Below, in pieces: positions 4,836 to 54,600 of a stretch of DNA of 64,000 nt. The notes below the pieces were generated by a model. It saw nothing but the letters and a program-made list of their open reading frames with translations. It did not search any database and was not told the DNA's origin. The position numbers were made by a program, and so were the translations under genes. The DNA is taken from the sequence record MK308675.1, one strand, 5' to 3'. The first letter of the stretch is position 1. Every line of letters starts with the position of its first letter.

Positions 4836-4924
4836 CAGAAATCTCCTCATCAGGAGTAAGCCCTCGCCCTAAGGACGCTCGAACGTCCTTAGGGCATTCT
4901 GCTTTTTATCTAAAGCATCGGTAT

Positions 4925-4937
4925 GGTAATATAGGTT
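4925..4937 (-). promoter_or_regulatory. early-type phage promoter motif (AACCTATATTACC)
   Basis: identical 13-mer at 47079-47091, variants at 37430, 50545, 59762; all upstream of minus-strand genes; contains the TATTAC core reported for phiKZ early promoters. Confidence 0.6.
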
Positions 4938-4950
4938 TTATTTTTAACTG

Positions 4951-4960
4951 AATCTTATGA
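4951..4960 (+). promoter_or_regulatory. late-type promoter motif AATCTTATGA
   Basis: recurs before structural and lysis genes; contains TATG as in phiKZ late promoters. Confidence 0.55.
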
Positions 4961-4988
4961 CTTGTTAACCATTACAGGAAATATAACA

Positions 4989-27408: not shown

Positions 27409-28650
27409 ATGACAATGGATATCCGCGAATCGATTAATGCCGCACTAAATGCTAATCGCCTAGAAAACGCTGAAACATTTACTGTAGCCGAGACTCAGCA
27501 ACTTATGACTGAGTTCACTACTCTAGCTAAAGAACACTTCGAAGCATCTAACGTTCTAGCTGCTCTTGAGAGACTCATGGTTGAGTCTAAAGGTGCTAAG
27601 CCACAACTTGTACTGTCACAAGCAAACATGCTCTTAGGGGAGCGCTGGGAGCTTTCTCTACCTTCCATGGAATCGTACGACGAACTAACTACCGAAGTTG
27701 CAATGGAAGGTATTGTGGATGTCGGTAAGAAGATTCTTAAGTTCGTTAAAGACACAGCTAAGTCACTTAAGAAGAAAGGCAAGGTGTTCTTCCGTGCTTT
27801 AGGTAACCTATTCCGTAACGACTACCAAATCGCTCAAGACGTTCTAGCGGAGCTAAATGGTAAACCTGACTTTAAAGAAGGCGAACTTAGCTTTAGCGAC
27901 GGTGGTCAATTCTTCATGGGTGAAGGTGTGGAATACCGCACTGCTGCTGAAGTAGTGACTGCGATGGCTTCTAACATTCTTACTCTAGACGCTGAGCGTT
28001 TTAATAAGCTATTCTCAGATGCAGCTAAAGCAGTAGCATTTGCTGAGAACGATGCGGCCATGAATATCAGTGAAGTTACTAAGCACTGCATTGAGACCAT
28101 GAACCTCAATCATACTTCTGACCACGATGAGAAAGCGTACTACATCACTGACGGTAAAGTACCAGGTAGCTGGAAATACAGCGCAGTAACTGAGAAAGCA
28201 GTTGTGGGCGGTCAGATTGCCGAATTCCTTATGGAAGGCGACTCTATTCTGCCGCGCCGTCGCGGTGGCATTAAGATGCAGGCGATGACTGAAGAAGAAG
28301 TACGTGCAGTTTGTGACGTAATCATGAAGTACTCTCAGCATGGACAGAACTTAGTTTCCGTTATGGCTGACCGTTACTGGGATACTGTGGCTTACATGGA
28401 TAAAGTAGATAGCTCCATGTGGGAAACTCACGAGTACACGGATTACGAGAAAGACGAAGATGGTAACGATGTAGAAATCACTACGACCATCACTTACGAC
28501 TTAGCTCGCAATGAACAACACTGGAAAGCATACGTTCGCATTTCTAATGTGTTCTGGGTAACCATGCATTACCTAAACGCTCTATTCAGTCACGCTAGTA
28601 ACTGTAACAAAGCAATGGCCGAAATGGCTCAGTCTTCTTACGAAGTATAA
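27409..28650 (+). CDS. phiKZ-like internal head (virion) protein
   Basis: PSMES...ELTTEVAMEGI propeptide motif followed by Lys-rich amphipathic helix. Confidence 0.7.
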   Translation: MTMDIRESINAALNANRLENAETFTVAETQQLMTEFTTLAKEHFEASNVLAALERLMVESKGAKPQLVLSQANMLLGERWELSLPSMESYDELTTEVAMEGIVDVGKKILKFVKDTAKSLKKKGKVFFRALGNLFRNDYQIAQDVLAELNGKPDFKEGELSFSDGGQFFMGEGVEYRTAAEVVTAMASNILTLDAERFNKLFSDAAKAVAFAENDAAMNISEVTKHCIETMNLNHTSDHDEKAYYITDGKVPGSWKYSAVTEKAVVGGQIAEFLMEGDSILPRRRGGIKMQAMTEEEVRAVCDVIMKYSQHGQNLVSVMADRYWDTVAYMDKVDSSMWETHEYTDYEKDEDGNDVEITTTITYDLARNEQHWKAYVRISNVFWVTMHYLNALFSHASNCNKAMAEMAQSSYEV

Positions 28651-37429: not shown

Positions 37430-37442
37430 GGCTATATAGGTT
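37430..37442 (-). promoter_or_regulatory. early-type promoter variant AACCTATATAGCC
   Basis: similar to 4925 and 47079 motif, upstream of 36524-37381. Confidence 0.45.
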
Positions 37443-45580: not shown

Positions 45581-46567
45581 TTAATGTGAACTACGGTACT
45601 TGCGCACCATTAATGACGGGAATATGTAATCTGCATCTAGTAAAGACGGATGCCACATTATCCACGCTCTAGACTTTCCTAGATGGCGAGCCATGTCTGT
45701 TTGGAAGCGACTACCTTCATGCCAGTGGTCCGTAGAATAGTAGTTAGTTAGCGTAGGTAACTCACGCTTCTTCCGACAATCTCGAGCAGCGCAAGAAGCC
45801 ATGAGCTGAGTTTGCCAAGTAGCTAGGCCGTGGCGCGAATGCTCTATGTTGTCGACCGTTAGTCTTGCTGGGCTAAGACTGCGACACTGATTTATCGCCA
45901 CCTCGTTATCATGTGAAGGCCAGTAATGTAAAGATTCCGTACCATTCTTCTTGGCCTTCTGTTCGAAACCACCGTAGAGAACAGTGTCAGCTATTTGAAC
46001 GAGGTCCAGGTGGTCGGACATAGAGTAATCGAAAGCTTCGAATAGCCATTCAGGAACCGCTATAATCTTCTTCTTCAACATGGAATTGAAGTGATGTTCC
46101 GTTATCGTGCGGTTCGACTCCAGATAGACTTGAGTCACGTTAGTCTCAAAGAGGAGCGTATGTAACTCTAGTCCTAAACCCCATATCGTCTTACCGTCTT
46201 GTCGACCAGCTTGGAACCATACGTCTTCGAGGTGGTTGTCTACAGCATAAAGAATACCTAGTGTCTCTGTGCTGATTTTAAAGGGCAGGTATTCAGAGAG
46301 GCCCGGGTTATAGACTCGCAGTACCTCTCTAAAGAAATAGGTTTTATTTTCACGACACTCGAAAAAGATAATGCCTTTTTCTTGGTCAGTTAAATCTTCG
46401 GACCAAGGGTCTAGCCCTATTGTTTCAGGGAACTTAACCCGTAAAGGATACTTGTAGTTTCCCACACGCATCTCTCTTAAAGTTTCCGAGAGAATGTTAA
46501 AGGAATGGTTAGAGGTCCCCGGATAAGAATACTCGCCGGCATTCGGATTGAAAGGTTTCAGTTGCAT
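45581..46567 (-). CDS. truncated terminase large subunit-like ATPase
   Basis: GLDPW...EC-x-x-N-x-x-YFFREVLRV and Walker A GRQDGKT resemble phiKZ-type TerL N-terminus; no nuclease domain. Confidence 0.6.
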   Translation of the reverse strand: MQLKPFNPNAGEYSYPGTSNHSFNILSETLREMRVGNYKYPLRVKFPETIGLDPWSEDLTDQEKGIIFFECRENKTYFFREVLRVYNPGLSEYLPFKISTETLGILYAVDNHLEDVWFQAGRQDGKTIWGLGLELHTLLFETNVTQVYLESNRTITEHHFNSMLKKKIIAVPEWLFEAFDYSMSDHLDLVQIADTVLYGGFEQKAKKNGTESLHYWPSHDNEVAINQCRSLSPARLTVDNIEHSRHGLATWQTQLMASCAARDCRKKRELPTLTNYYSTDHWHEGSRFQTDMARHLGKSRAWIMWHPSLLDADYIFPSLMVRKYRSSH

Positions 46568-46681
46568 TGTTTTAACTCCGTCGTTAAACAAACTAAGGCG
46601 CGATTGCCATTCTATTCTCAGGGAGAATAAAAAATAAAAGATGAGGTAAAGAAAGAGGGAGGCCGAAGACTCCCTTATAGT

Positions 46682-46759: not shown

Positions 46760-47047
46760 TTAAAGGACGTATTCTTGACCTTCTTCGAGGCCGTGTGGCT
46801 GTTCAGTGATTAGGTAAGCTTGACGATTAACGAAGTAATGTCCCGGGACTACCAGCACGTTATCGTTTTCGTCGTCGATGTAAACGGTTAAGATATATTG
46901 GTTGCCTTTTTGACGTAAGACTTCGTCTACCTTTGCGTCGAGAACTGGCCAGCCGTAAACGGTCCCGTCGTACTCAACACCTTCGCCGTTCGGACAAGAA
47001 ACTAGCCCCTTAGTTAATAGGTATTCAAGGATGTCATCGATTTCCAT
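46760..47047 (-). CDS. hypothetical protein
   Basis: GAGGA SD; directly downstream of early motif 47079. Confidence 0.8.
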   Translation of the reverse strand: MEIDDILEYLLTKGLVSCPNGEGVEYDGTVYGWPVLDAKVDEVLRQKGNQYILTVYIDDENDNVLVVPGHYFVNRQAYLITEQPHGLEEGQEYVL

Positions 47048-47078
47048 AGGGTTTTCCTCTTACATTGATATTCACATA

Positions 47079-47091
47079 GGTAATATAGGTT
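47079..47091 (-). promoter_or_regulatory. early-type promoter motif AACCTATATTACC
   Basis: identical to 4925-4937. Confidence 0.6.
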
Positions 47092-47104
47092 ATAGTTTGC
47101 TCTG

Positions 47105-47114
47105 AATCTTGTAG
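47105..47114 (+). promoter_or_regulatory. late-type promoter motif AATCTTGTAG
   Basis: upstream of chitinase gene. Confidence 0.5.
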
Positions 47115-47161
47115 GGACGCTGTTCCTATAATGAACGTTCATTTTAATCGGGATTAAAGTT

Positions 47162-48922
47162 ATGTACGATAACAAAATCATTAGACTCGCACGTTATGCG
47201 GGAGAAGACTTAGAATTCATGCCGTGGTTCTTTGTGGACGACGACAGCGGAGTTACTCAGAAGGAAATCCCTGAGTTTAAGAATACGCTTTCGTTTGACG
47301 CGAACGATATCTGCGAGAAAGAAGGTAAACTGTACTACACAGAAGAAGCCTTAGCTCCGGCAGACTGGGACGACACTAAGTGGAAGGAAATCGCTGTAGT
47401 GTTGGCTTACTTAAACAACCACAAGACTTATCTGGAATACGAACTTGACTCTTTCGTTCTTCACGAAGACGTCATCTATAAGAACAACAAAGTAGTGTCT
47501 GGAGAGTTCAACAGTGCCGACTGGGACGAAGTAGATGTAAACACGCTTATTGCTGACATCTATACCTACACCGCAGCAGGTGCTTCTTTGGAGATTACTA
47601 CTCTAGCTTCTATGCCATCAGCTAAGCTAGGTTTGTTCGCTCCTGAAATCGTGCTACCTACTCCAGGTACAGGTACGGCTTCATTCTTTATGTATTACCC
47701 TTCGTGGTCTACTCAGACGTTTGGTTTGGGTGATACAGACGCTGTATTGCGTAAACCGTCTAACATGCCTGACTATGTAACTCACACCATGTTGAGCTTT
47801 GCTAAGGCACATGGCTTTACGTTTGATAAGAGCTCCCCTGACATTGCTGAAGCAAACACGGGCTTGCAGTTCCCTGTAGGAATCGACGCAGCTATTCTTA
47901 AAGAAGATATCGCTAAAGCTCAGGCAGCCGGACAGAAGGTTTACATTTCAGTGGGCGGTGCTACTTACGGACGTGACGCTGGTCGCTTAGACCCATGGAC
48001 TAACATGATTACTGAGGCGAAGGACTTAATGTCAGGTACCGCATTTGATGCACTTACTCACGTTGAGACAGACGCATACATTCAGTTCATGGAGTACTTC
48101 GAGCTAGACGGTATCGACTTGGACTTCGAAGACAACCCAGCTTACCACAACAACGACTTTGTTGAGTACCTAGAGAACTACCATGCTCTCTGTTACCTGA
48201 TGCGCTACATTGCCGATGCTGCGGCTACAACGCTCACTAAGACTGTTGAAACTGCAAGTGCTTGTTGGTCTACTGGTTTTGACCAAACGGCTCGCTCTAA
48301 GGCAGACACAAACACTCCTGGCGCAGACCATGAACTAATCGGTTACTTCGGTGACCATGCTGGTCGTGACCGTATGGCTTTCGGTGGTTTCACTGATAGT
48401 GCAGGCGATGCTCGGAATGCCGCACAATACATCGACAACTATATCCTTATGTCGTACGACGCGATGTTCGGTAATCATAAAGACGGTAACCCTGAAACAG
48501 ATTCAGATTCCCTTTATGACCCGGTCGTTTGTTACAACGAGGCACGTGCTATTATTCCGGCCTCTAAAGTGGTAGCTATTGGTTTAATTGCTGGTGACCA
48601 CGGTTTCGGTGACCACTACCTAATGTTGAATGATGCTGACTGTTCTGATACAGCCCCTCATCAGACTCTATTAGAGAAAGACCAATATCAACGTTTCGTT
48701 ATGGCTCCTTATTCAGTAGAGCGCCTATGTCGTACGGTTCGTGAAAACGAAGTGAATGATAAAGACGGTTGCTTGATGTGGGCAGCATTTAAACTGCTCG
48801 GCGATGGTGCTACGTATGAGTTCGATGGAGTTAAAGCAGGTACTGTTACAGAAATCTGTGAGAAAGCTTCTTTAGAGTTCGGCGTCGGTACTGAAACTGG
48901 TTACGTGATGGATTACGTATAA
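47162..48922 (+). CDS. glycoside hydrolase family 18 (chitinase-like) with N-terminal carbohydrate-binding-like repeats
   Basis: ISVGG and DGIDLDFE (DxxDxDxE) catalytic motif; two N-terminal Y/F-x-x-x-x-x-V/C...Y...W repeats. Confidence 0.85.
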   Translation: MYDNKIIRLARYAGEDLEFMPWFFVDDDSGVTQKEIPEFKNTLSFDANDICEKEGKLYYTEEALAPADWDDTKWKEIAVVLAYLNNHKTYLEYELDSFVLHEDVIYKNNKVVSGEFNSADWDEVDVNTLIADIYTYTAAGASLEITTLASMPSAKLGLFAPEIVLPTPGTGTASFFMYYPSWSTQTFGLGDTDAVLRKPSNMPDYVTHTMLSFAKAHGFTFDKSSPDIAEANTGLQFPVGIDAAILKEDIAKAQAAGQKVYISVGGATYGRDAGRLDPWTNMITEAKDLMSGTAFDALTHVETDAYIQFMEYFELDGIDLDFEDNPAYHNNDFVEYLENYHALCYLMRYIADAAATTLTKTVETASACWSTGFDQTARSKADTNTPGADHELIGYFGDHAGRDRMAFGGFTDSAGDARNAAQYIDNYILMSYDAMFGNHKDGNPETDSDSLYDPVVCYNEARAIIPASKVVAIGLIAGDHGFGDHYLMLNDADCSDTAPHQTLLEKDQYQRFVMAPYSVERLCRTVRENEVNDKDGCLMWAAFKLLGDGATYEFDGVKAGTVTEICEKASLEFGVGTETGYVMDYV

Positions 48923-48927
48923 AGACT

Positions 48928-48957
48928 ACTCCTACCTCCTTTGCGGGAGGTAGGAGT
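48928..48957. terminator. bidirectional terminator
   Basis: 12-bp stem ACTCCTACCTCC between convergent genes. Confidence 0.75.
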
Positions 48958-48964
48958 TTATCTT

Positions 48965-50179
48965 TTATAGTACGTGACGTTTACACATGTCCAAGTATGC
49001 TTCGTACAGTCTTCCTTGGAACTCAAAGAAGTCTTGCGCTGCATAGATAATCTGAATGAATAGATTGTAAGAGATGTTCCCCAAATGACGATGTTGGTCT
49101 TTAGAGATTTCCATGTCTTCAGTTTTCTCTGAGTAGGTTTCCATAATAAGGCGACCTACGTCATCCATCATGCCCATGGCAGCGTGCCAGTTCTTGGTAG
49201 ACGTTAGCGTTGTACGCTTCATGTTGCTAAGCACAGACTTAAGCTCATTTGCAGATAGAGGAGCAATCTCTTCAACACCAGACTTACGAACTACATCATC
49301 GTTGTCCGTGTACCAAGTTACATCGCGTAGAACTAAGTAGTACTCGCTTAGAGTCGCTTTACGTTCTAGGACAGTCGCTTGTTGGAAGCCACCTGCTACG
49401 CCTTCACGCGTTGCGTAGAAAACATATGCTGGGTTCTTAGAAGAGTAAAGCTTCTTACCGTCTGCTTCAGATTGGCCAGTACGGTCCAAGTAAAGAGTCG
49501 CTGCTTGGCTAATTGAAAGTAGAGCAGACTTGTAATCAGGCCATTTATCTTTCTTAAGTTTAGCTAGGACTTCTTCGAATGCTTCGAAAGTCAGGTTACG
49601 GTTAGACATACCTGCCCATTCCGTTAATGCTTTCTCTACTTCGGTAGGAACGCCGTCAGCTTGGAAGTAAAGGCGCTTAGGTTTAGGAATCTTAACGGCT
49701 TCTTCCGTGATGTCGCCCTGAGACACTAGACGAGTAATGTCATCTAACTTACCGTCGAAGTCTTTAAACTTCATCGAGATGGCTTGGCCAATCTTCTTGA
49801 TTTTCTTTTTAGCTTTATCTAGCTTATCGTTCCAGATAGCTTTAAGGGTATCGATAACAGAACCGATGCCTTCCATTGCGACTTCAGTAGTTAGCTCTAC
49901 ATCTGACTCCATTGCGAAAGACTGTAGCTGTAGCTCTGGCGTGGCTTTAAGGATGTTGTTCGCAGACGAAATAAGCATCTCTGCGGTTGCGCCTTCTGAG
50001 TTATCTTTCAAGAAGGTTAGTTCACCGATTAGCTTAGCAGCGTCACGGATTGTTTCGTTTTCTTCACGGCACTCCTGAAGGAATGCTTCCGCTTCTTCTA
50101 CTGTTTTGAATTCACCAGTATCGAAAGAGGCGTCGAGCTCAGCTTGTTTTACCTGAGCGAAATGTTGTCGTAAACTCAT
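48965..50179 (-). CDS. phiKZ-like internal head (virion) protein, paralog of 27409-28650
   Basis: SFAMES...ELTTEVAMEGI motif shared with 27409-28650. Confidence 0.7.
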   Translation of the reverse strand: MSLRQHFAQVKQAELDASFDTGEFKTVEEAEAFLQECREENETIRDAAKLIGELTFLKDNSEGATAEMLISSANNILKATPELQLQSFAMESDVELTTEVAMEGIGSVIDTLKAIWNDKLDKAKKKIKKIGQAISMKFKDFDGKLDDITRLVSQGDITEEAVKIPKPKRLYFQADGVPTEVEKALTEWAGMSNRNLTFEAFEEVLAKLKKDKWPDYKSALLSISQAATLYLDRTGQSEADGKKLYSSKNPAYVFYATREGVAGGFQQATVLERKATLSEYYLVLRDVTWYTDNDDVVRKSGVEEIAPLSANELKSVLSNMKRTTLTSTKNWHAAMGMMDDVGRLIMETYSEKTEDMEISKDQHRHLGNISYNLFIQIIYAAQDFFEFQGRLYEAYLDMCKRHVL

Positions 50180-50544: not shown

Positions 50545-50557
50545 GGCAATATAGGTC
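50545..50557 (-). promoter_or_regulatory. early-type promoter variant GACCTATATTGCC
   Basis: similar to 4925 motif. Confidence 0.5.
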
Positions 50558-53715: not shown

Positions 53716-54600
53716 TTATTGGTTGGCTACGAGCAAACTCATACGGCCAAACGTGTTACCGCCTACGATGCCATCCTGAACTAGACCTTCTTTAGCCTGG
53801 AAGGCCTTGATTGCAGTGAGGGTACGTTTTCCGTAGTGGCCGTCCACTTTATGTAGATAGCCGAGAGCTCGTAAATATTTTTGCACTTCTCTAACCGATT
53901 GTCCACGGTCGTTAAATCTCACAATCGGACGTTTGTAGATAGAGGAGTCTTCCAACATAATGCCAAGCGCACGGTTGGTCTTCGCGATACGGTCAGGTAA
54001 GCCGTGCTGTCCGCCATTAATGATTCGAGTCACCACCTTAGTCGCGCCTTCGTCCGCCCATTCTAATGCGGTCTTACCGTTGCGTTTGTTTGTTTTAAGG
54101 AACCAACAAGCCGCCATAAGGCCGATAGCGGCATCATTGATAAGAACATTAGGCTGTTCTTCTAACTCTAGTCCTAGGGCCGTACCGGCCGCGATATAGT
54201 TATTCTTACCCGTTAACTGGATTGGGCCACGGCCGCGATAAAGGTATCCTTCTCCTGGGGCATTGTTACCCATTCGTCCGCCATAGACAAAGTTGGCAAT
54301 CTTCTCTTTCTGGCGATGATACTTCTTAGCCTGGCCTTTAGTTTTAAAACGGGATGGCCAGACCTTCATTAGAGTCTGCCAACTATAGTTCAAATTCTCT
54401 TCAAAGCGAACAAAGCCACCCGACTCATGCGCACACTGTCCGATAAGCATAGCCCAACGACGTACTGTGTTGATGCCTTGGTTTTCGATTTGCTTACGGA
54501 ACTGCATGACACTGTAAGCATATTCGATTGATGCACCGCAAGCGATAAGTGCCTCTACTAGGTTGTCGTTTGAAAGCGGGTCTTTCTTGGTCTGAAACAT
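53716..54600 (-). CDS. modular endolysin: GH19 catalytic domain plus C-terminal peptidoglycan-binding domain
   Basis: QCAHESGGF, ENLNYS, YRGRGPIQLTGKNNY; C-terminal VQ-x-x-L...DG-x-YG-x-x-T...FQ...DGIVG; late motif at 54622. Confidence 0.9.
   Translation of the reverse strand: MFQTKKDPLSNDNLVEALIACGASIEYAYSVMQFRKQIENQGINTVRRWAMLIGQCAHESGGFVRFEENLNYSWQTLMKVWPSRFKTKGQAKKYHRQKEKIANFVYGGRMGNNAPGEGYLYRGRGPIQLTGKNNYIAAGTALGLELEEQPNVLINDAAIGLMAACWFLKTNKRNGKTALEWADEGATKVVTRIINGGQHGLPDRIAKTNRALGIMLEDSSIYKRPIVRFNDRGQSVREVQKYLRALGYLHKVDGHYGKRTLTAIKAFQAKEGLVQDGIVGGNTFGRMSLLVANQ

What the first reader, a model, noticed from the sequence alone, without database searches (positions are those of the whole stretch)
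47162..48922. Phage-encoded modular GH18 chitinase under a late-type promoter
Seen: intact DxxDxDxE motif (DGIDLDFE) and SxGG, two N-terminal aromatic repeats resembling CBM5/12, own late-type motif (47105) and terminator. Established: GH18 chitinases are known from baculoviruses and chloroviruses; phage lysins called chitinase are usually GH19, and this window has a separate GH19 endolysin. Inference: a virion-associated or lysis-released enzyme acting on chitin surfaces or GlcNAc-rich biofilm or capsule where Vibrio hosts live.
Basis: partly seen in the sequence, partly recalled or inferred. Interest (0 to 1): 0.7.

Follow-up and report, generated by a model that had tools for sequence, protein, structure and literature searches.

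The report
Tail-fibre-type GH18 glycosidase, Vibrio jumbo phage
A giant virus of marine Vibrio bacteria carries an unannotated gene that joins a tail-fibre-type attachment module to an intact chitinase-family (GH18) enzyme, so the virus particle may carry an enzyme that binds or cuts chitin-like sugars, a family not so far reported on phage tails.

Summary
ORF 47162-48922 (+, 586 aa) is QAX96285.1, annotated "hypothetical protein", of the phiKZ-related jumbo Vibrio phage vB_VmeM-Yong.

- **Catalytic domain.** Residues ~170-586 form a divergent GH18 TIM barrel. All signature residues are present: YYPSW, SVGG, DGIDLDFE, MSYD and Trp540.
- **Transcription unit.** The gene has its own recurrent upstream motif and a 13-bp terminator hairpin. 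The same motif class precedes virion-protein genes and, as a variant, the separate GH19 endolysin gene.
- **N-terminal repeats.** They are CBM5/12-related. Their closest solved relatives are the baseplate-anchoring N-termini of the Milano gp124 tailspike and the 7-7-1 long tail fibre.
- **Module swapping.** In related phages the same N-module is fused to a GDSL esterase, or to a domain shared with an Ackermannviridae tail protein. Other clade members lie directly after giant fibre-like genes.
- **Distribution.** The phage GH18s form one small clade, found in Vibrio jumbo phages and uncultured phage-like contigs. Two orthologs have lost the catalytic motif but remain intact ORFs.

Best reading: a late-expressed, tail-mounted GlcNAc-glycan binding and cleaving protein. 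The substrate and presence in the virion are untested. I rate it a new variant of a known kind, of moderate interest.

The parts
47080..47089 (-). Class-A promoter-like motif (CCTATATTAC read on the - strand) serving the divergent neighbour gene 46760-47047. It is not part of the GH18 unit but shows that the two divergent genes use different promoter classes.
   Evidence: The motif has 20 copies genome-wide, most of them a short distance upstream of start codons. It fits the conserved ~10-nt AT-rich early (virion RNAP) promoter type described for RNAP-encoding jumbo phages (PMC7598289).
47104..47114 (+). Class-B ('late-type') promoter-like motif GAATCTTGTAG, 57 nt upstream of the start codon.
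   Evidence: AATCTTNTAG occurs 5 times against 0.8 expected in the window and 8 times genome-wide, all oriented toward a downstream start. The same class precedes a virion structural protein (phrog_3004, E 7e-117), internal-head-protein-like genes and, as the variant GAATCTTATG, the endolysin. Similar motifs precede homologs in BONAISHI, sm033, L004 and L008. No sigma-70 promoter was found.
47162..48922 (+). Complete ORF of 586 aa (QAX96285.1, annotated 'hypothetical protein'). It is the only + strand gene in a long run of - strand genes.
   Evidence: There is no signal peptide or TM segment, and GC is 46.2 % against 45.6 % for the window.
47162..47566 (+). N-module, aa 1-135: a lineage-specific beta-hairpin (aa 6-25) followed by two CBM5/12-derived repeats (about aa 40-77 and 89-125).
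   Evidence: AF2 secondary structure. The profile hits 7-7-1 long tail fibre res 28-123 (E 2.6e-11) and Milano tailspike gp124 res 28-132 (E 4.3e-10). Foldseek's top five hits are those same chains. hhalign to CBM_5_12 segments gives 97.9 %. The module is shared with a GDSL esterase in L002 and with BONAISHI P0079.
47567..47647 (+). Predicted disordered linker, aa 136-162.
   Evidence: pLDDT is below 50 for residues 135-162 and for 139-165.
47669..48919 (+). Divergent GH18 (beta/alpha)8 catalytic domain, aa ~170-586.
   Evidence: Pfam PF00704 E 1.3e-6. The family profile hits 128 PDB GH18 chains. Foldseek returns only GH18 barrels. The domain belongs to a phage-only clade with SH-aLRT 99.
47948..47959 (+). 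SVGG (SxGG motif, strand beta-3), aa 263-266.
   Evidence: It aligns to SVGG of B. circulans ChiA1 (1itx).
48107..48130 (+). DGIDLDFE (DxxDxDxE, strand beta-4; Glu323 is the predicted acid/base), aa 316-323.
   Evidence: It aligns to DGVDLDWE of 1itx. The motif is lost in orthologs P0009 and P0010.
48449..48460 (+). MSYD (MxYD motif, strand beta-6), aa 430-433.
48779..48781 (+). Trp540 (conserved beta-8 Trp of the -1 subsite, in 'DGCLMW').
48928..48957 (.). Bidirectional intrinsic-terminator hairpin (13-bp stem, 7 GC pairs) shared with the convergent gene 48965-50179.

Best explanation
The gene encodes a tail-fibre or tailspike-type modular protein, made in the cytoplasm late in infection.

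Domain layout:
- N-module (aa 1-135): a lineage-specific hairpin followed by two CBM5/12-derived repeats.
- Linker: about 30 residues, flexible.
- Catalytic domain: about 420 residues, a GH18 TIM barrel with the full substrate-assisted catalytic apparatus. That apparatus is Asp319, Asp321 and Glu323, Tyr432 and Asp433, Ser263 and Trp540.

The N-module is homologous to the baseplate-anchoring N-terminus of the Milano gp124 tailspike and the 7-7-1 long tail fibre.

The most likely mode of action is that the N-module attaches the protein to the tail, probably as a trimer like its solved relatives. The tethered GH18 domains would then bind and cleave a beta-1,4-GlcNAc-containing glycan during host finding or adsorption. 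That glycan could be chitin, on which Vibrio hosts live, or a GlcNAc-rich host envelope or biofilm polysaccharide.

Shown here: the ORF, the fold, the motifs, the homology of each module, module swapping in relatives, the shared promoter class, and the narrow phage-only clade.

Inferred: timing of expression, incorporation into the virion, oligomeric state, and substrate.
For: GH18 fold and complete catalytic signature:
-.

N-module homology to anchoring modules:
- Sequence profiles hit the N-terminal region of solved tail fibre and tailspike proteins at the same position in the chain: 9rkv_M at E 2.6e-11 and 8fqc_P1 at E 4.3e-10.
- The query alone ranks gp124 first, at E 0.038.
- Foldseek with the N-module model returns those chains as its top five hits.
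- The whole-protein model also hits 9rkv_M.

Cassette behaviour of the N-module:
- In L002 it heads a GDSL esterase gene adjacent to the GH18 homolog.
- In BONAISHI P0079 it heads a distal domain that is homologous to the C-terminus of a 903-aa protein. That protein sits beside another annotated tail protein in the Ackermannviridae phage Kuja. The same domain occurs in proteins of other V. coralliilyticus phages.

Fibre-gene context:
- Clade members sm033_302 and P0007 lie directly downstream of homologous giant repeat-rich ORFs that match tail-fibre PHROGs.

Expression class:
- The promoter-class motif is shared with virion structural, internal-head-like and endolysin genes. It differs from the 20-copy early-type motif that drives the divergent neighbour.

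Other points:
- There is no signal peptide.
- Orthologs with dead catalytic motifs remain intact ORFs, one at the syntenic locus. This fits a structural or binding role.
Against: - No virion proteome or structure exists for this phage group. The BONAISHI paper has no mass spectrometry and left ORF238 as hypothetical.
- The gene is far from the presumed tail and baseplate region. It lies among replication, PhoH and lysis genes.
- The first ~37 residues do not align with gp124 or gp015, so the actual docking interface is not conserved.
- Foldseek TM-scores for the N-module are low, 0.25-0.28.
- The same repeats also resemble the tandem chitin-binding CBM12 domains of Vibrio chitooligosaccharide deacetylase. 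They could therefore be plain carbohydrate-binding modules.
- The target's motif copy differs at one position from the dominant AATCTTATAG. It also lies further from the start codon, 57 nt against 33-44 nt for the five AATCTTATAG copies.
- GH18 barrels are usually monomeric and have not been reported as tailspike heads.
Confidence: 0.55

Rival explanations
1. It is a soluble, non-virion late protein released at lysis. The tandem CBM5/12-like repeats bind chitin and the GH18 domain degrades chitin or chitin-associated matrix around the lysed cell. This would free progeny or alter the chitin niche, in the manner of an auxiliary or lysis-released chitinase.
For: - The catalytic signature is intact.
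- The N-module is related to CBM_5_12 and to the tandem CBM12 domains of Vibrio chitooligosaccharide deacetylases and chitinase ChBDs.
- There is no signal peptide, so release would need lysis.
- The promoter class is shared with the endolysin.
- The gene lies near the lysis region, not near tail genes.
- The hosts are chitin-associated vibrios.
Against: - The best sequence and structure matches of the N-module are tail-anchoring modules, ahead of free CBMs.
- The module is exchanged with a domain shared with a Kuja tail protein.
- Relatives sit beside giant fibre-like genes.
- Catalytically dead orthologs are retained.
- A benefit to a strictly lytic phage from chitin turnover after lysis is unclear.
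Confidence: 0.25
2. It is mainly a non-catalytic glycan-binding or structural protein, a 'chi-lectin' on or off the virion. On this view the intact motif in this phage is ancestral and hydrolysis is not the selected function.
For: - Two of eight full-length or catalytic relatives in the phage clade (P0009, P0010) have lost DxDxE, MxYD and the beta-8 Trp, yet remain intact ORFs of 549-577 aa.
- P0009 is the positional ortholog and the sister of the query.
- GH18 pseudo-enzymes that keep glycan binding are well known. CHI3L1-type chitinase-like proteins appear among the fold matches.
Against: - Six of the eight proteins in alignment A1, and sm033_302, keep every catalytic residue despite only 36-46 % identity. 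This indicates purifying selection on catalysis in most lineages.
- The dead variants sit on end branches about five times longer, indicating changed or relaxed constraint rather than the ancestral state.
Confidence: 0.1
3. It is an accessory peptidoglycan hydrolase used in entry or lysis.
For: - GH18 chemistry acts on beta-1,4-linked GlcNAc, which peptidoglycan contains.
- The gene is late-type and lies about 5 kb from the endolysin.
- The BONAISHI paper notes that jumbo phages often carry several wall-degrading enzymes (PMC6207643).
Against: - A canonical GH19 + PG_binding_1 endolysin is already present.
- The protein has no peptidoglycan-binding domain and no match to PHROG lysis families.
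- All relatives are polysaccharide-degrading modular enzymes carrying CBM2, GH5, ChiA_N and fn3.
- All structural neighbours are chitinases, chitinase-like proteins or GlcNAc-ases.
Confidence: 0.05
4. It is a functionless passenger gene (a moron) that is in the process of decay.
For: - It has a lone inverted orientation with its own promoter and terminator.
- Its distribution among related phages is patchy. The pir03 relative lacks it.
- Some orthologs are dead.
Against: - The 586-aa ORF is intact and its composition matches the genome.
- It is identical in four isolates.
- The locus and orientation are conserved in a distant relative.
- 77 residues are invariant across six proteins at 36-40 % identity to the query.
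Confidence: 0.03

Closest known systems
GH18 family chitinases and chitinase-like proteins (e.g. B. circulans ChiA1 1itx, S. marcescens ChiB, C. violaceum 4txg, Chitiniphilus ChiL 6kst)
   Same: (beta/alpha)8 barrel with the SxGG, DxxDxDxE and MxYD motifs and the beta-8 Trp. The predicted mechanism is substrate-assisted retaining hydrolysis.
   Different: - Only 11-16 % identical, with TM about 0.5-0.58 normalised to the target.
- The Pfam model matches only its first half, positions 2-184 of 317.
- The subfamily has its own conserved blocks: WSTG-D-T, AGR(D/E)R, PYSVER and DQY.
- No characterised member and no NCBIfam model.
- No signal peptide.
Milano gp124 tailspike (8fqc) and 7-7-1 gp015 long tail fibre (9rkv)
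   Same: The N-terminal tandem-repeat module occupies the same position in the chain, about residues 28-130. The proteins are almost the same length (586 against 587 aa). They share the architecture of an N-terminal anchor followed by a distal functional domain.
   Different: - The distal part is a GH18 TIM barrel joined by a disordered linker, in place of a beta-helix plus jelly-roll.
- The first ~37 residues, and the Cys residues that tie gp124 to the baseplate, are not conserved.
- Virion location is unproven here.
Phage virion-associated polysaccharide depolymerases and esterases (tailspikes with enzymatic heads)
   Same: A conserved N-terminal anchor with interchangeable enzymatic or receptor-binding heads, exchanged among phages of related hosts. 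Here the heads are GH18, a GDSL esterase, and a domain shared with a Kuja tail protein.
   Different: - Known depolymerase heads are mostly beta-helix lyases or hydrolases, sialidase propellers or SGNH esterases.
- Two full-text searches found no report of a GH18 tailspike or depolymerase, and the single paper returned by a third search concerns another subject.
- The substrate is unknown.
Viral GH18 chitinases of eukaryotic viruses (chlorovirus vChti-1, hytrosavirus, giant-virus GH18s) and the prophage GH19 chitinase AMG
   Same: They are virus-encoded chitinase-family enzymes. The GH18 examples appear as distant fold matches. A prophage chitinase that supports host growth on chitin has been shown (PMC11788074, as summarised).
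   Different: - Those are soluble or secreted enzymes.
- The tested prophage enzyme is GH19.
- GH18 is rare in phages: 14 of 1.43 million soil viral genes and 6 of 50,697 phage genomes for this clade.
CBM5/12 chitin-binding modules (e.g. the tandem CBM12 of Vibrio chitooligosaccharide deacetylase, ChiB/ChiC ChBDs, 2rts)
   Same: The same small beta-hairpin repeat with the pattern Y-x2-(D/G)-x-V-x3-x-LY ... G-x-W-x4-W. hhalign gives 97.9 %, Pfam CBM_5_12 is hit in 4 of 8 orthologous N-modules, and there are Foldseek hits.
   Different: - The query's own repeats do not reach Pfam thresholds.
- From inspecting the sequence, the exposed Trp-Trp pair typical of chitin-binding CBM5/12 is not evident. 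I did not test this.
- The closer relatives are tail-fibre anchors.

Membership tests
Glycoside hydrolase family 18 | (beta/alpha)8 TIM-barrel fold | tested here: met
   In the AF2 model (pLDDT 83.8) the catalytic domain is mostly above 90. Apart from one local tail-fibre hit, the listed PDB Foldseek matches are GH18 barrels with probability 1.00.
Glycoside hydrolase family 18 | DxxDxDxE on beta-4, with the catalytic Glu | tested here: met
   D316-G-I-D319-L-D321-F-E323. It aligns to the catalytic motif of 1itx in the profile search. D319, D321 and E323 are at least 90 % conserved in A1.
Glycoside hydrolase family 18 | SxGG (beta-3), MxYD (beta-6) and the conserved beta-8 Trp | tested here: met
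   S263-V-G-G266, M430-S-Y432-D433 and W540.
Glycoside hydrolase family 18 | Pfam PF00704 at the curated gathering score | tested here: inconclusive
   The query alone scores 28.7 bits against a cutoff of 29.6. The collection's precomputed Pfam tags list PF00704 for the query and its relatives. Ten bacterial relatives pass at 36-69 bits. The family profile hits 128 PDB GH18 chains.
Glycoside hydrolase family 18 | Hydrolysis of beta-1,4-GlcNAc linkages (chitin, chito-oligosaccharides or another GlcNAc glycan) | not testable with these tools
   This needs an enzyme assay. No characterised member of this subfamily was found.
CBM5/12 carbohydrate-binding module | Sequence-profile match to CBM_5_12 (PF02839) | tested here: inconclusive
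   The query N-terminus has no Pfam hit at E <= 1. Four of eight orthologous N-modules hit, the best at E 1e-5. hhalign of the N-module profile against bona fide CBM_5_12 segments gives 97.9 % and E 3.4e-13. phmmer relatives are strong CBM_5_12 repeat proteins.
CBM5/12 carbohydrate-binding module | Binding to chitin through exposed aromatic residues | not testable with these tools
   This needs a pull-down on chitin beads. Coordinates of the model were not available for surface analysis.
Tail-fibre/tailspike N-terminal tail-binding module (Milano gp124 / 7-7-1 gp015 type) | Sequence homology to the module, at the N-terminus of the chain | tested here: met
   Profile A4: 9rkv_M res 28-123 at E 2.6e-11 and 8fqc_P1 res 28-126 at E 4.3e-10. 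Profile A5: E 1e-8 and 6.7e-8. The query alone ranks gp124 first at E 0.038.
Tail-fibre/tailspike N-terminal tail-binding module (Milano gp124 / 7-7-1 gp015 type) | Structural similarity of the module | tested here: inconclusive
   The top five Foldseek hits are 8fqc_Q1/P1 and 9rkv_M/N/O at E 9e-7 to 2e-5 with probability 1.00. However, TM is only 0.25-0.28 and rmsd is high.
Tail-fibre/tailspike N-terminal tail-binding module (Milano gp124 / 7-7-1 gp015 type) | Conservation of the extreme N-terminus and Cys residues that dock onto the baseplate | tested here: not met
   The alignments begin at profile position ~38 and gp124 residue 28. gp124 Cys15, Cys24 and Cys26 have no counterpart here. Residues 1-37 are conserved only within the Vibrio-phage group.
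Tail-fibre/tailspike N-terminal tail-binding module (Milano gp124 / 7-7-1 gp015 type) | Physical presence on the virion tail; trimeric state | not testable with these tools
   No proteome or structure exists for Yong, BONAISHI or sm033.
Tail-fibre/tailspike N-terminal tail-binding module (Milano gp124 / 7-7-1 gp015 type) | Location within a tail or baseplate gene cluster | tested here: not met
   In Yong the gene lies among DNA ligase, PhoH and endolysin genes. In sm033 and L016, however, the homolog directly follows a giant fibre-like gene.
Phage endolysin / lysis cassette | Peptidoglycan-binding domain, lysis-family match, adjacency to holin or spanin | tested here: not met
   There is no PHROG match at all, so no lysis family either, and no PG-binding domain. 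A separate GH19 + PG_binding_1 endolysin lies at 53716-54600.
Secreted bacterial-type chitinase / auxiliary metabolic gene | N-terminal secretion signal | tested here: not met
   The N-terminus is charged. The maximum 10-residue hydropathy in the first 40 residues is 0.88, and there is no TM segment.

The most novel reading that the evidence does not exclude
The virion carries a baseplate-tethered, active GH18 chitinase and uses it on an environmental polymer rather than on a host receptor. Particles would dock on chitin surfaces, where vibrios graze, and cut their way along or through chitin and chitin-bound biofilm. This would concentrate phage at the host's feeding sites, a 'chitin-surfing' counterpart of phage adherence to mucus. 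Lineages with dead enzymes would keep only the docking function.
Probability: 0.2. Interest if true: 0.8.

Novelty: new variant of a known kind. Interest (0 to 1): 0.55.

Why it matters
Enzymes on phage tails decide which cells and which niches a phage can reach, and they are used as anti-biofilm and anti-capsule tools. A GH18 head on a tail-fibre anchor would add a new catalytic family to that toolkit.

It would also give a testable link between jumbo vibriophages and the chitin surfaces that structure Vibrio ecology.

The paired active and dead orthologs offer a natural experiment on when catalysis, as opposed to mere binding, is needed.

In practical terms, four Yong genomes and BONAISHI ORF238 are annotated 'hypothetical' at this locus and can now be annotated. 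The two promoter classes defined here help with reading the transcription programme of this phage group.

Tried and rejected
- **Sigma-70 promoter upstream.** The scan found none. A TATAAT at 47127-47132 has no properly spaced -35 element.
- **Single-sequence searches.**
  - PHROGs gave 0 hits.
  - NCBIfam gave 0 hits.
  - PDB phmmer gave only E 0.6.
  - Profiles were needed to get further.
- **Collection scans.**
  - IMG/VR scans with two alignments found no relatives.
  - The scan of GTDB species genomes found only five distant GH18s.
  - The first attempt at that scan failed for lack of a conserved stretch.
- **P0079 as an SGNH esterase.** I first read SGNH-like blocks by eye in the C-terminus of BONAISHI P0079. 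Pfam, PHROGs, hhalign against the GH18 profile, and PDB all gave nothing. I therefore withdrew that call. What is shown is homology to the C-terminus of the Kuja tail protein. The true GDSL esterase carrying the N-module is the L002 protein.
- **Peptidoglycan hydrolase and secreted-AMG readings.** Both were rejected on domain content and on the missing signal peptide.
- **Recent horizontal insertion.** GC and GC3 match neighbouring genes, and the locus is conserved in L007.
- **RNA genes.** tRNA and Rfam scans of the window found nothing.
- **Errors.** One PHROG call failed on a mis-framed coordinate. One script failed on file names.
Full report
**What is there**

The window is the last 64 kb of the ~290-kb genome of Vibrio phage vB_VmeM-Yong, whose host is Vibrio mediterranei. 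The region 47000-49000 is 100 % identical in four deposited isolates.

The ORF at 47162-48922 (+, 586 aa) is real. It is annotated QAX96285.1, 'hypothetical protein'. It is the only + strand gene in a long run of - strand genes.

It also carries the other GH18 signatures: YYPSW (aa 178-182), MSYD (aa 430-433) and the beta-8 Trp540.

There is no signal peptide or membrane segment. GC and GC3 match neighbouring genes, so this is not a recent insertion.

**Is it GH18?**

On its own the protein is borderline:
- Pfam PF00704 gives E 1.3e-6 and 28.7 bits against a 29.6-bit cutoff. Only the first half of the model is matched.
- PHROGs, NCBIfam and single-sequence PDB searches find nothing useful.

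An exhaustive HMMER search of 1.84 billion representatives finds only 86 relatives. A profile of 20 of them hits 128 solved GH18 chains, the best being 1itx at E 8e-16. That alignment covers SxGG, DxDxE and MxYD.

The AlphaFold model has mean pLDDT 83.8, and the barrel is mostly above 90. Among the 50 listed PDB matches, all but one local tail-fibre hit are GH18 barrels. Identity is 11-16 % and TM is about 0.5-0.58 normalised to the target.

Membership in GH18 is therefore secure, and the catalytic machinery is complete. The subfamily is divergent and has no characterised member. 'Chitinase' remains an inference.

**Relatives and distribution**

The more distant relatives are bacterial modular enzymes with CBM2, GH5, ChiA_N, fn3 and CHB_HEX_C modules.

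Among 50,697 phage genomes, only six carry a homolog. They are the four Yong isolates, BONAISHI (ORF238, left as 'hypothetical' in its paper) and vB_VpaM_sm033. All are Vibrio jumbo phages.

IMG/VR scans and the GTDB species-genome scan gave no close relative.

In a maximum-likelihood tree, the nine GH18 domains from phage contexts form one clade (SH-aLRT 99), separate from 36 other sequences.

GH18 genes are rare in phages generally. One soil survey found 14 among 1.43 million viral genes, and it notes that the experimentally tested prophage chitinase is GH19.

**The N-terminal module**

The model shows three parts:
- a beta-hairpin at aa 6-25;
- two small repeat units at about aa 40-77 and 89-125;
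- a disordered linker at aa ~136-162, ahead of the barrel.

- The region's phmmer relatives are multi-repeat proteins with strong Pfam CBM_5_12 scores.
- Profile-profile comparison with bona fide CBM_5_12 segments gives 97.9 % probability.
- Four of eight orthologous N-modules reach Pfam CBM_5_12. The query's own copy does not.

The closest solved relatives, however, are not free carbohydrate-binding modules:
- The N-module profile matches residues 28-123 of the Agrobacterium phage 7-7-1 long tail fibre (E 2.6e-11).
- It matches residues 28-132 of the Milano tailspike gp124 (E 4.3e-10).
- It matches T4-type long-tail-fibre proximal subunits more weakly.
- The query alone ranks gp124 first at E 0.038.
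- Foldseek with a separate model of the N-module returns those chains as its top five hits. The tandem CBM12 domains of Vibrio chitooligosaccharide deacetylase come next.

[quoted passage not shown] Two caveats apply. TM-scores are low (0.25-0.28). The first ~37 residues, which include gp124's docking cysteines, are not shared.

**Module swapping and context in related phages**

The N-module behaves as a cassette:
- In an 84-kb phage-like metagenomic contig (L002), two adjacent genes begin with it. One continues into a GDSL esterase and the next into the GH18 domain.
- In BONAISHI a second protein (P0079) has the module followed by a 440-aa domain. That domain recurs at the C-terminus of a 903-aa protein in the Ackermannviridae phage Kuja, next to another annotated tail protein. 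It also recurs in proteins of four other V. coralliilyticus phages.
- A second architecture of the same GH18 clade (sm033_302 and P0007) lacks the module. It lies directly downstream of homologous, repeat-rich ORFs that are 2282 aa (annotated) and at least 1885 aa long and match tail-fibre PHROGs.

These are the patterns expected of host-interaction proteins on tails.

**Dead orthologs**

Two full-length relatives have lost DxDxE, MxYD and the beta-8 Trp. P0009 reads 'SGVVLYYG' and P0010 reads 'TGYLIDFR' at the catalytic motif.

P0009 is the positional ortholog on a 91-kb contig with phiKZ-type internal-head-protein hits. It has the same lone + orientation, and the downstream genes include a PhoH and a GH19 endolysin homolog. 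It is also the sister of the query in the tree.

Both dead forms are intact ORFs on end branches about five times longer than the others. Catalysis is conserved in most lineages but can be lost, so a binding or structural role is probably also under selection.

**Transcription signals**

No sigma-70 promoter is found upstream.

The phage group encodes multisubunit RNA polymerase homologs. Two phage-specific motif classes are evident.

Class A:
- Its consensus is aaaaCCTATAT(T/A)(A/G)C, with 20 copies genome-wide.
- One copy drives the divergent neighbour at 46760-47047.
- It fits the conserved AT-rich early promoter type of such phages.

Class B:
- Its consensus is AATCTTNTAG.
- It occurs 5 times against 0.8 expected in the window.
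- It occurs 8 times in the genome. Seven copies fall in DNA my ORF caller scores as intergenic. The eighth lies 80 nt upstream of a gene start, under an ORF that is not in the gene list.
- Variants ending in ATG also occur.

Class B sits 31-80 nt upstream of the following genes:
- the target;
- the convergent gene at 48965-50179;
- a virion structural protein (phrog_3004, E 7e-117);
- internal-head-protein-like genes;
- the GH19 endolysin.

Class-B-like motifs, usually just after a terminator hairpin, also precede homologs in BONAISHI, sm033, L004 and L008.

'Late-type' is therefore a reasonable inference, but it is not proven. The target's copy has G where most copies have A, and it lies somewhat further from the start codon.

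The 13-bp hairpin at 48928-48957 is a credible bidirectional terminator.

**Interpretation**

The best-supported reading (confidence about 0.55) is a late-expressed, tail-fibre-type protein. Its N-module anchors it to the tail. Its tethered GH18 heads bind and cleave a beta-1,4-GlcNAc-containing glycan, which could be chitin or a host envelope or biofilm polysaccharide.

The main rival (about 0.25) is a soluble chitin-binding chitinase released at lysis. Smaller rivals are a largely non-catalytic lectin-like protein, an accessory peptidoglycan hydrolase, and a passenger gene.

Virion proteomics, enzyme assays with an E323Q control, chitin pull-downs and a transcript time course would decide among them.

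**Novelty**

- Phage tail enzymes and viral GH18s are both known.
- Two full-text searches found no report of a GH18 head on a tail-fibre anchor. The single paper returned by a third search concerns a T1-like coliphage lysis module.
- The gene is unannotated in every deposited genome I examined.
- I rate it a new variant of a known kind, with interest about 0.55.

Noticed in passing
window 4926-4935, 37431-37440, 47080-47089 and 50546-50555 (all on the - strand); 20 copies in the whole genome: There is a strongly conserved motif, aaaaCCTATAT(T/A)(A/G)C, mostly a short distance upstream of - strand genes. It fits the early (virion RNA polymerase) promoter type described for RNAP-encoding jumbo phages. 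The divergent intergenic regions at 4851-4961 and 47048-47161 each carry one class-A and one class-B motif 25 nt apart, pointing in opposite directions.
   Followed up: partly
window 45581-46591 (-): A 336-aa ORF matches the N-terminal part of terminase large-subunit PHROGs (phrog_32359 at E 1e-15, phrog_2 at E 3e-13). The genome also has a gene annotated 'DNA helicase or terminase large subunit' elsewhere, at record 107033-109183. This may be a split or duplicated terminase.
   Followed up: no
L007 10001-11734 (P0009) and L008 2941-4590 (P0010): These are full-length orthologs of the GH18 protein in which the DxDxE motif, the MxYD motif and the beta-8 Trp are all replaced. They are still intact ORFs. 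P0009 is at the syntenic locus with the same inverted orientation. Both have very long tree branches.
   Followed up: yes
L009 10001-11818 (BONAISHI, 605 aa, P0079): This is a second BONAISHI protein with the same N-module. Like the Yong gene, it is a lone + strand gene in a - strand run, with AATCTTATAG 68 nt upstream. Its C-terminal 440 aa recur at the end of a Kuja (Ackermannviridae) tail protein and in proteins of phages YC, RYC, GR11A and GR28A of V. coralliilyticus. It is probably a receptor-binding protein.
   Followed up: partly
L002 8303-9976 and 10001-11758: In a phage-like metagenomic contig, a GDSL/SGNH esterase and the GH18 homolog are adjacent genes, and both start with the same N-module. 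An esterase plus a glycosidase pair would suit an O-acetylated GlcNAc-containing polysaccharide.
   Followed up: partly
window 48263-48265 (Cys368) and 48641-48643 (Cys494): Two cysteines, in the motifs 'ACWS' and 'DADC', are invariant in the six closest phage-clade proteins but are mostly Ala in the other relatives aligned in A1. They may form a clade-specific disulfide or metal site.
   Followed up: no
window 48965-50179 (-) and 27409-28650 (+): Both genes carry the strongest form of the class-B motif, AATCTTATAGACCTTA. The 27409 product weakly matches phiKZ internal head proteins (PF12699, E 2.8e-4). The gene at the position of 48965-50179 in contig L007 carries the same weak Pfam tag, although the two proteins share no BLASTP similarity at E 1e-5. 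They may be internal head proteins flanking the GH18 gene.
   Followed up: partly
L023 1-6544 (sm033_00301) and L016 2-5659: These giant ORFs (2282 aa annotated in sm033, at least 1885 aa in L016) are homologous and built of many ~60-aa repeats. The L016 ORF matches tail-fibre PHROGs. Each is followed immediately by a GH18 clade member with a different short N-terminus of the 'ILPGxI' type.
   Followed up: partly
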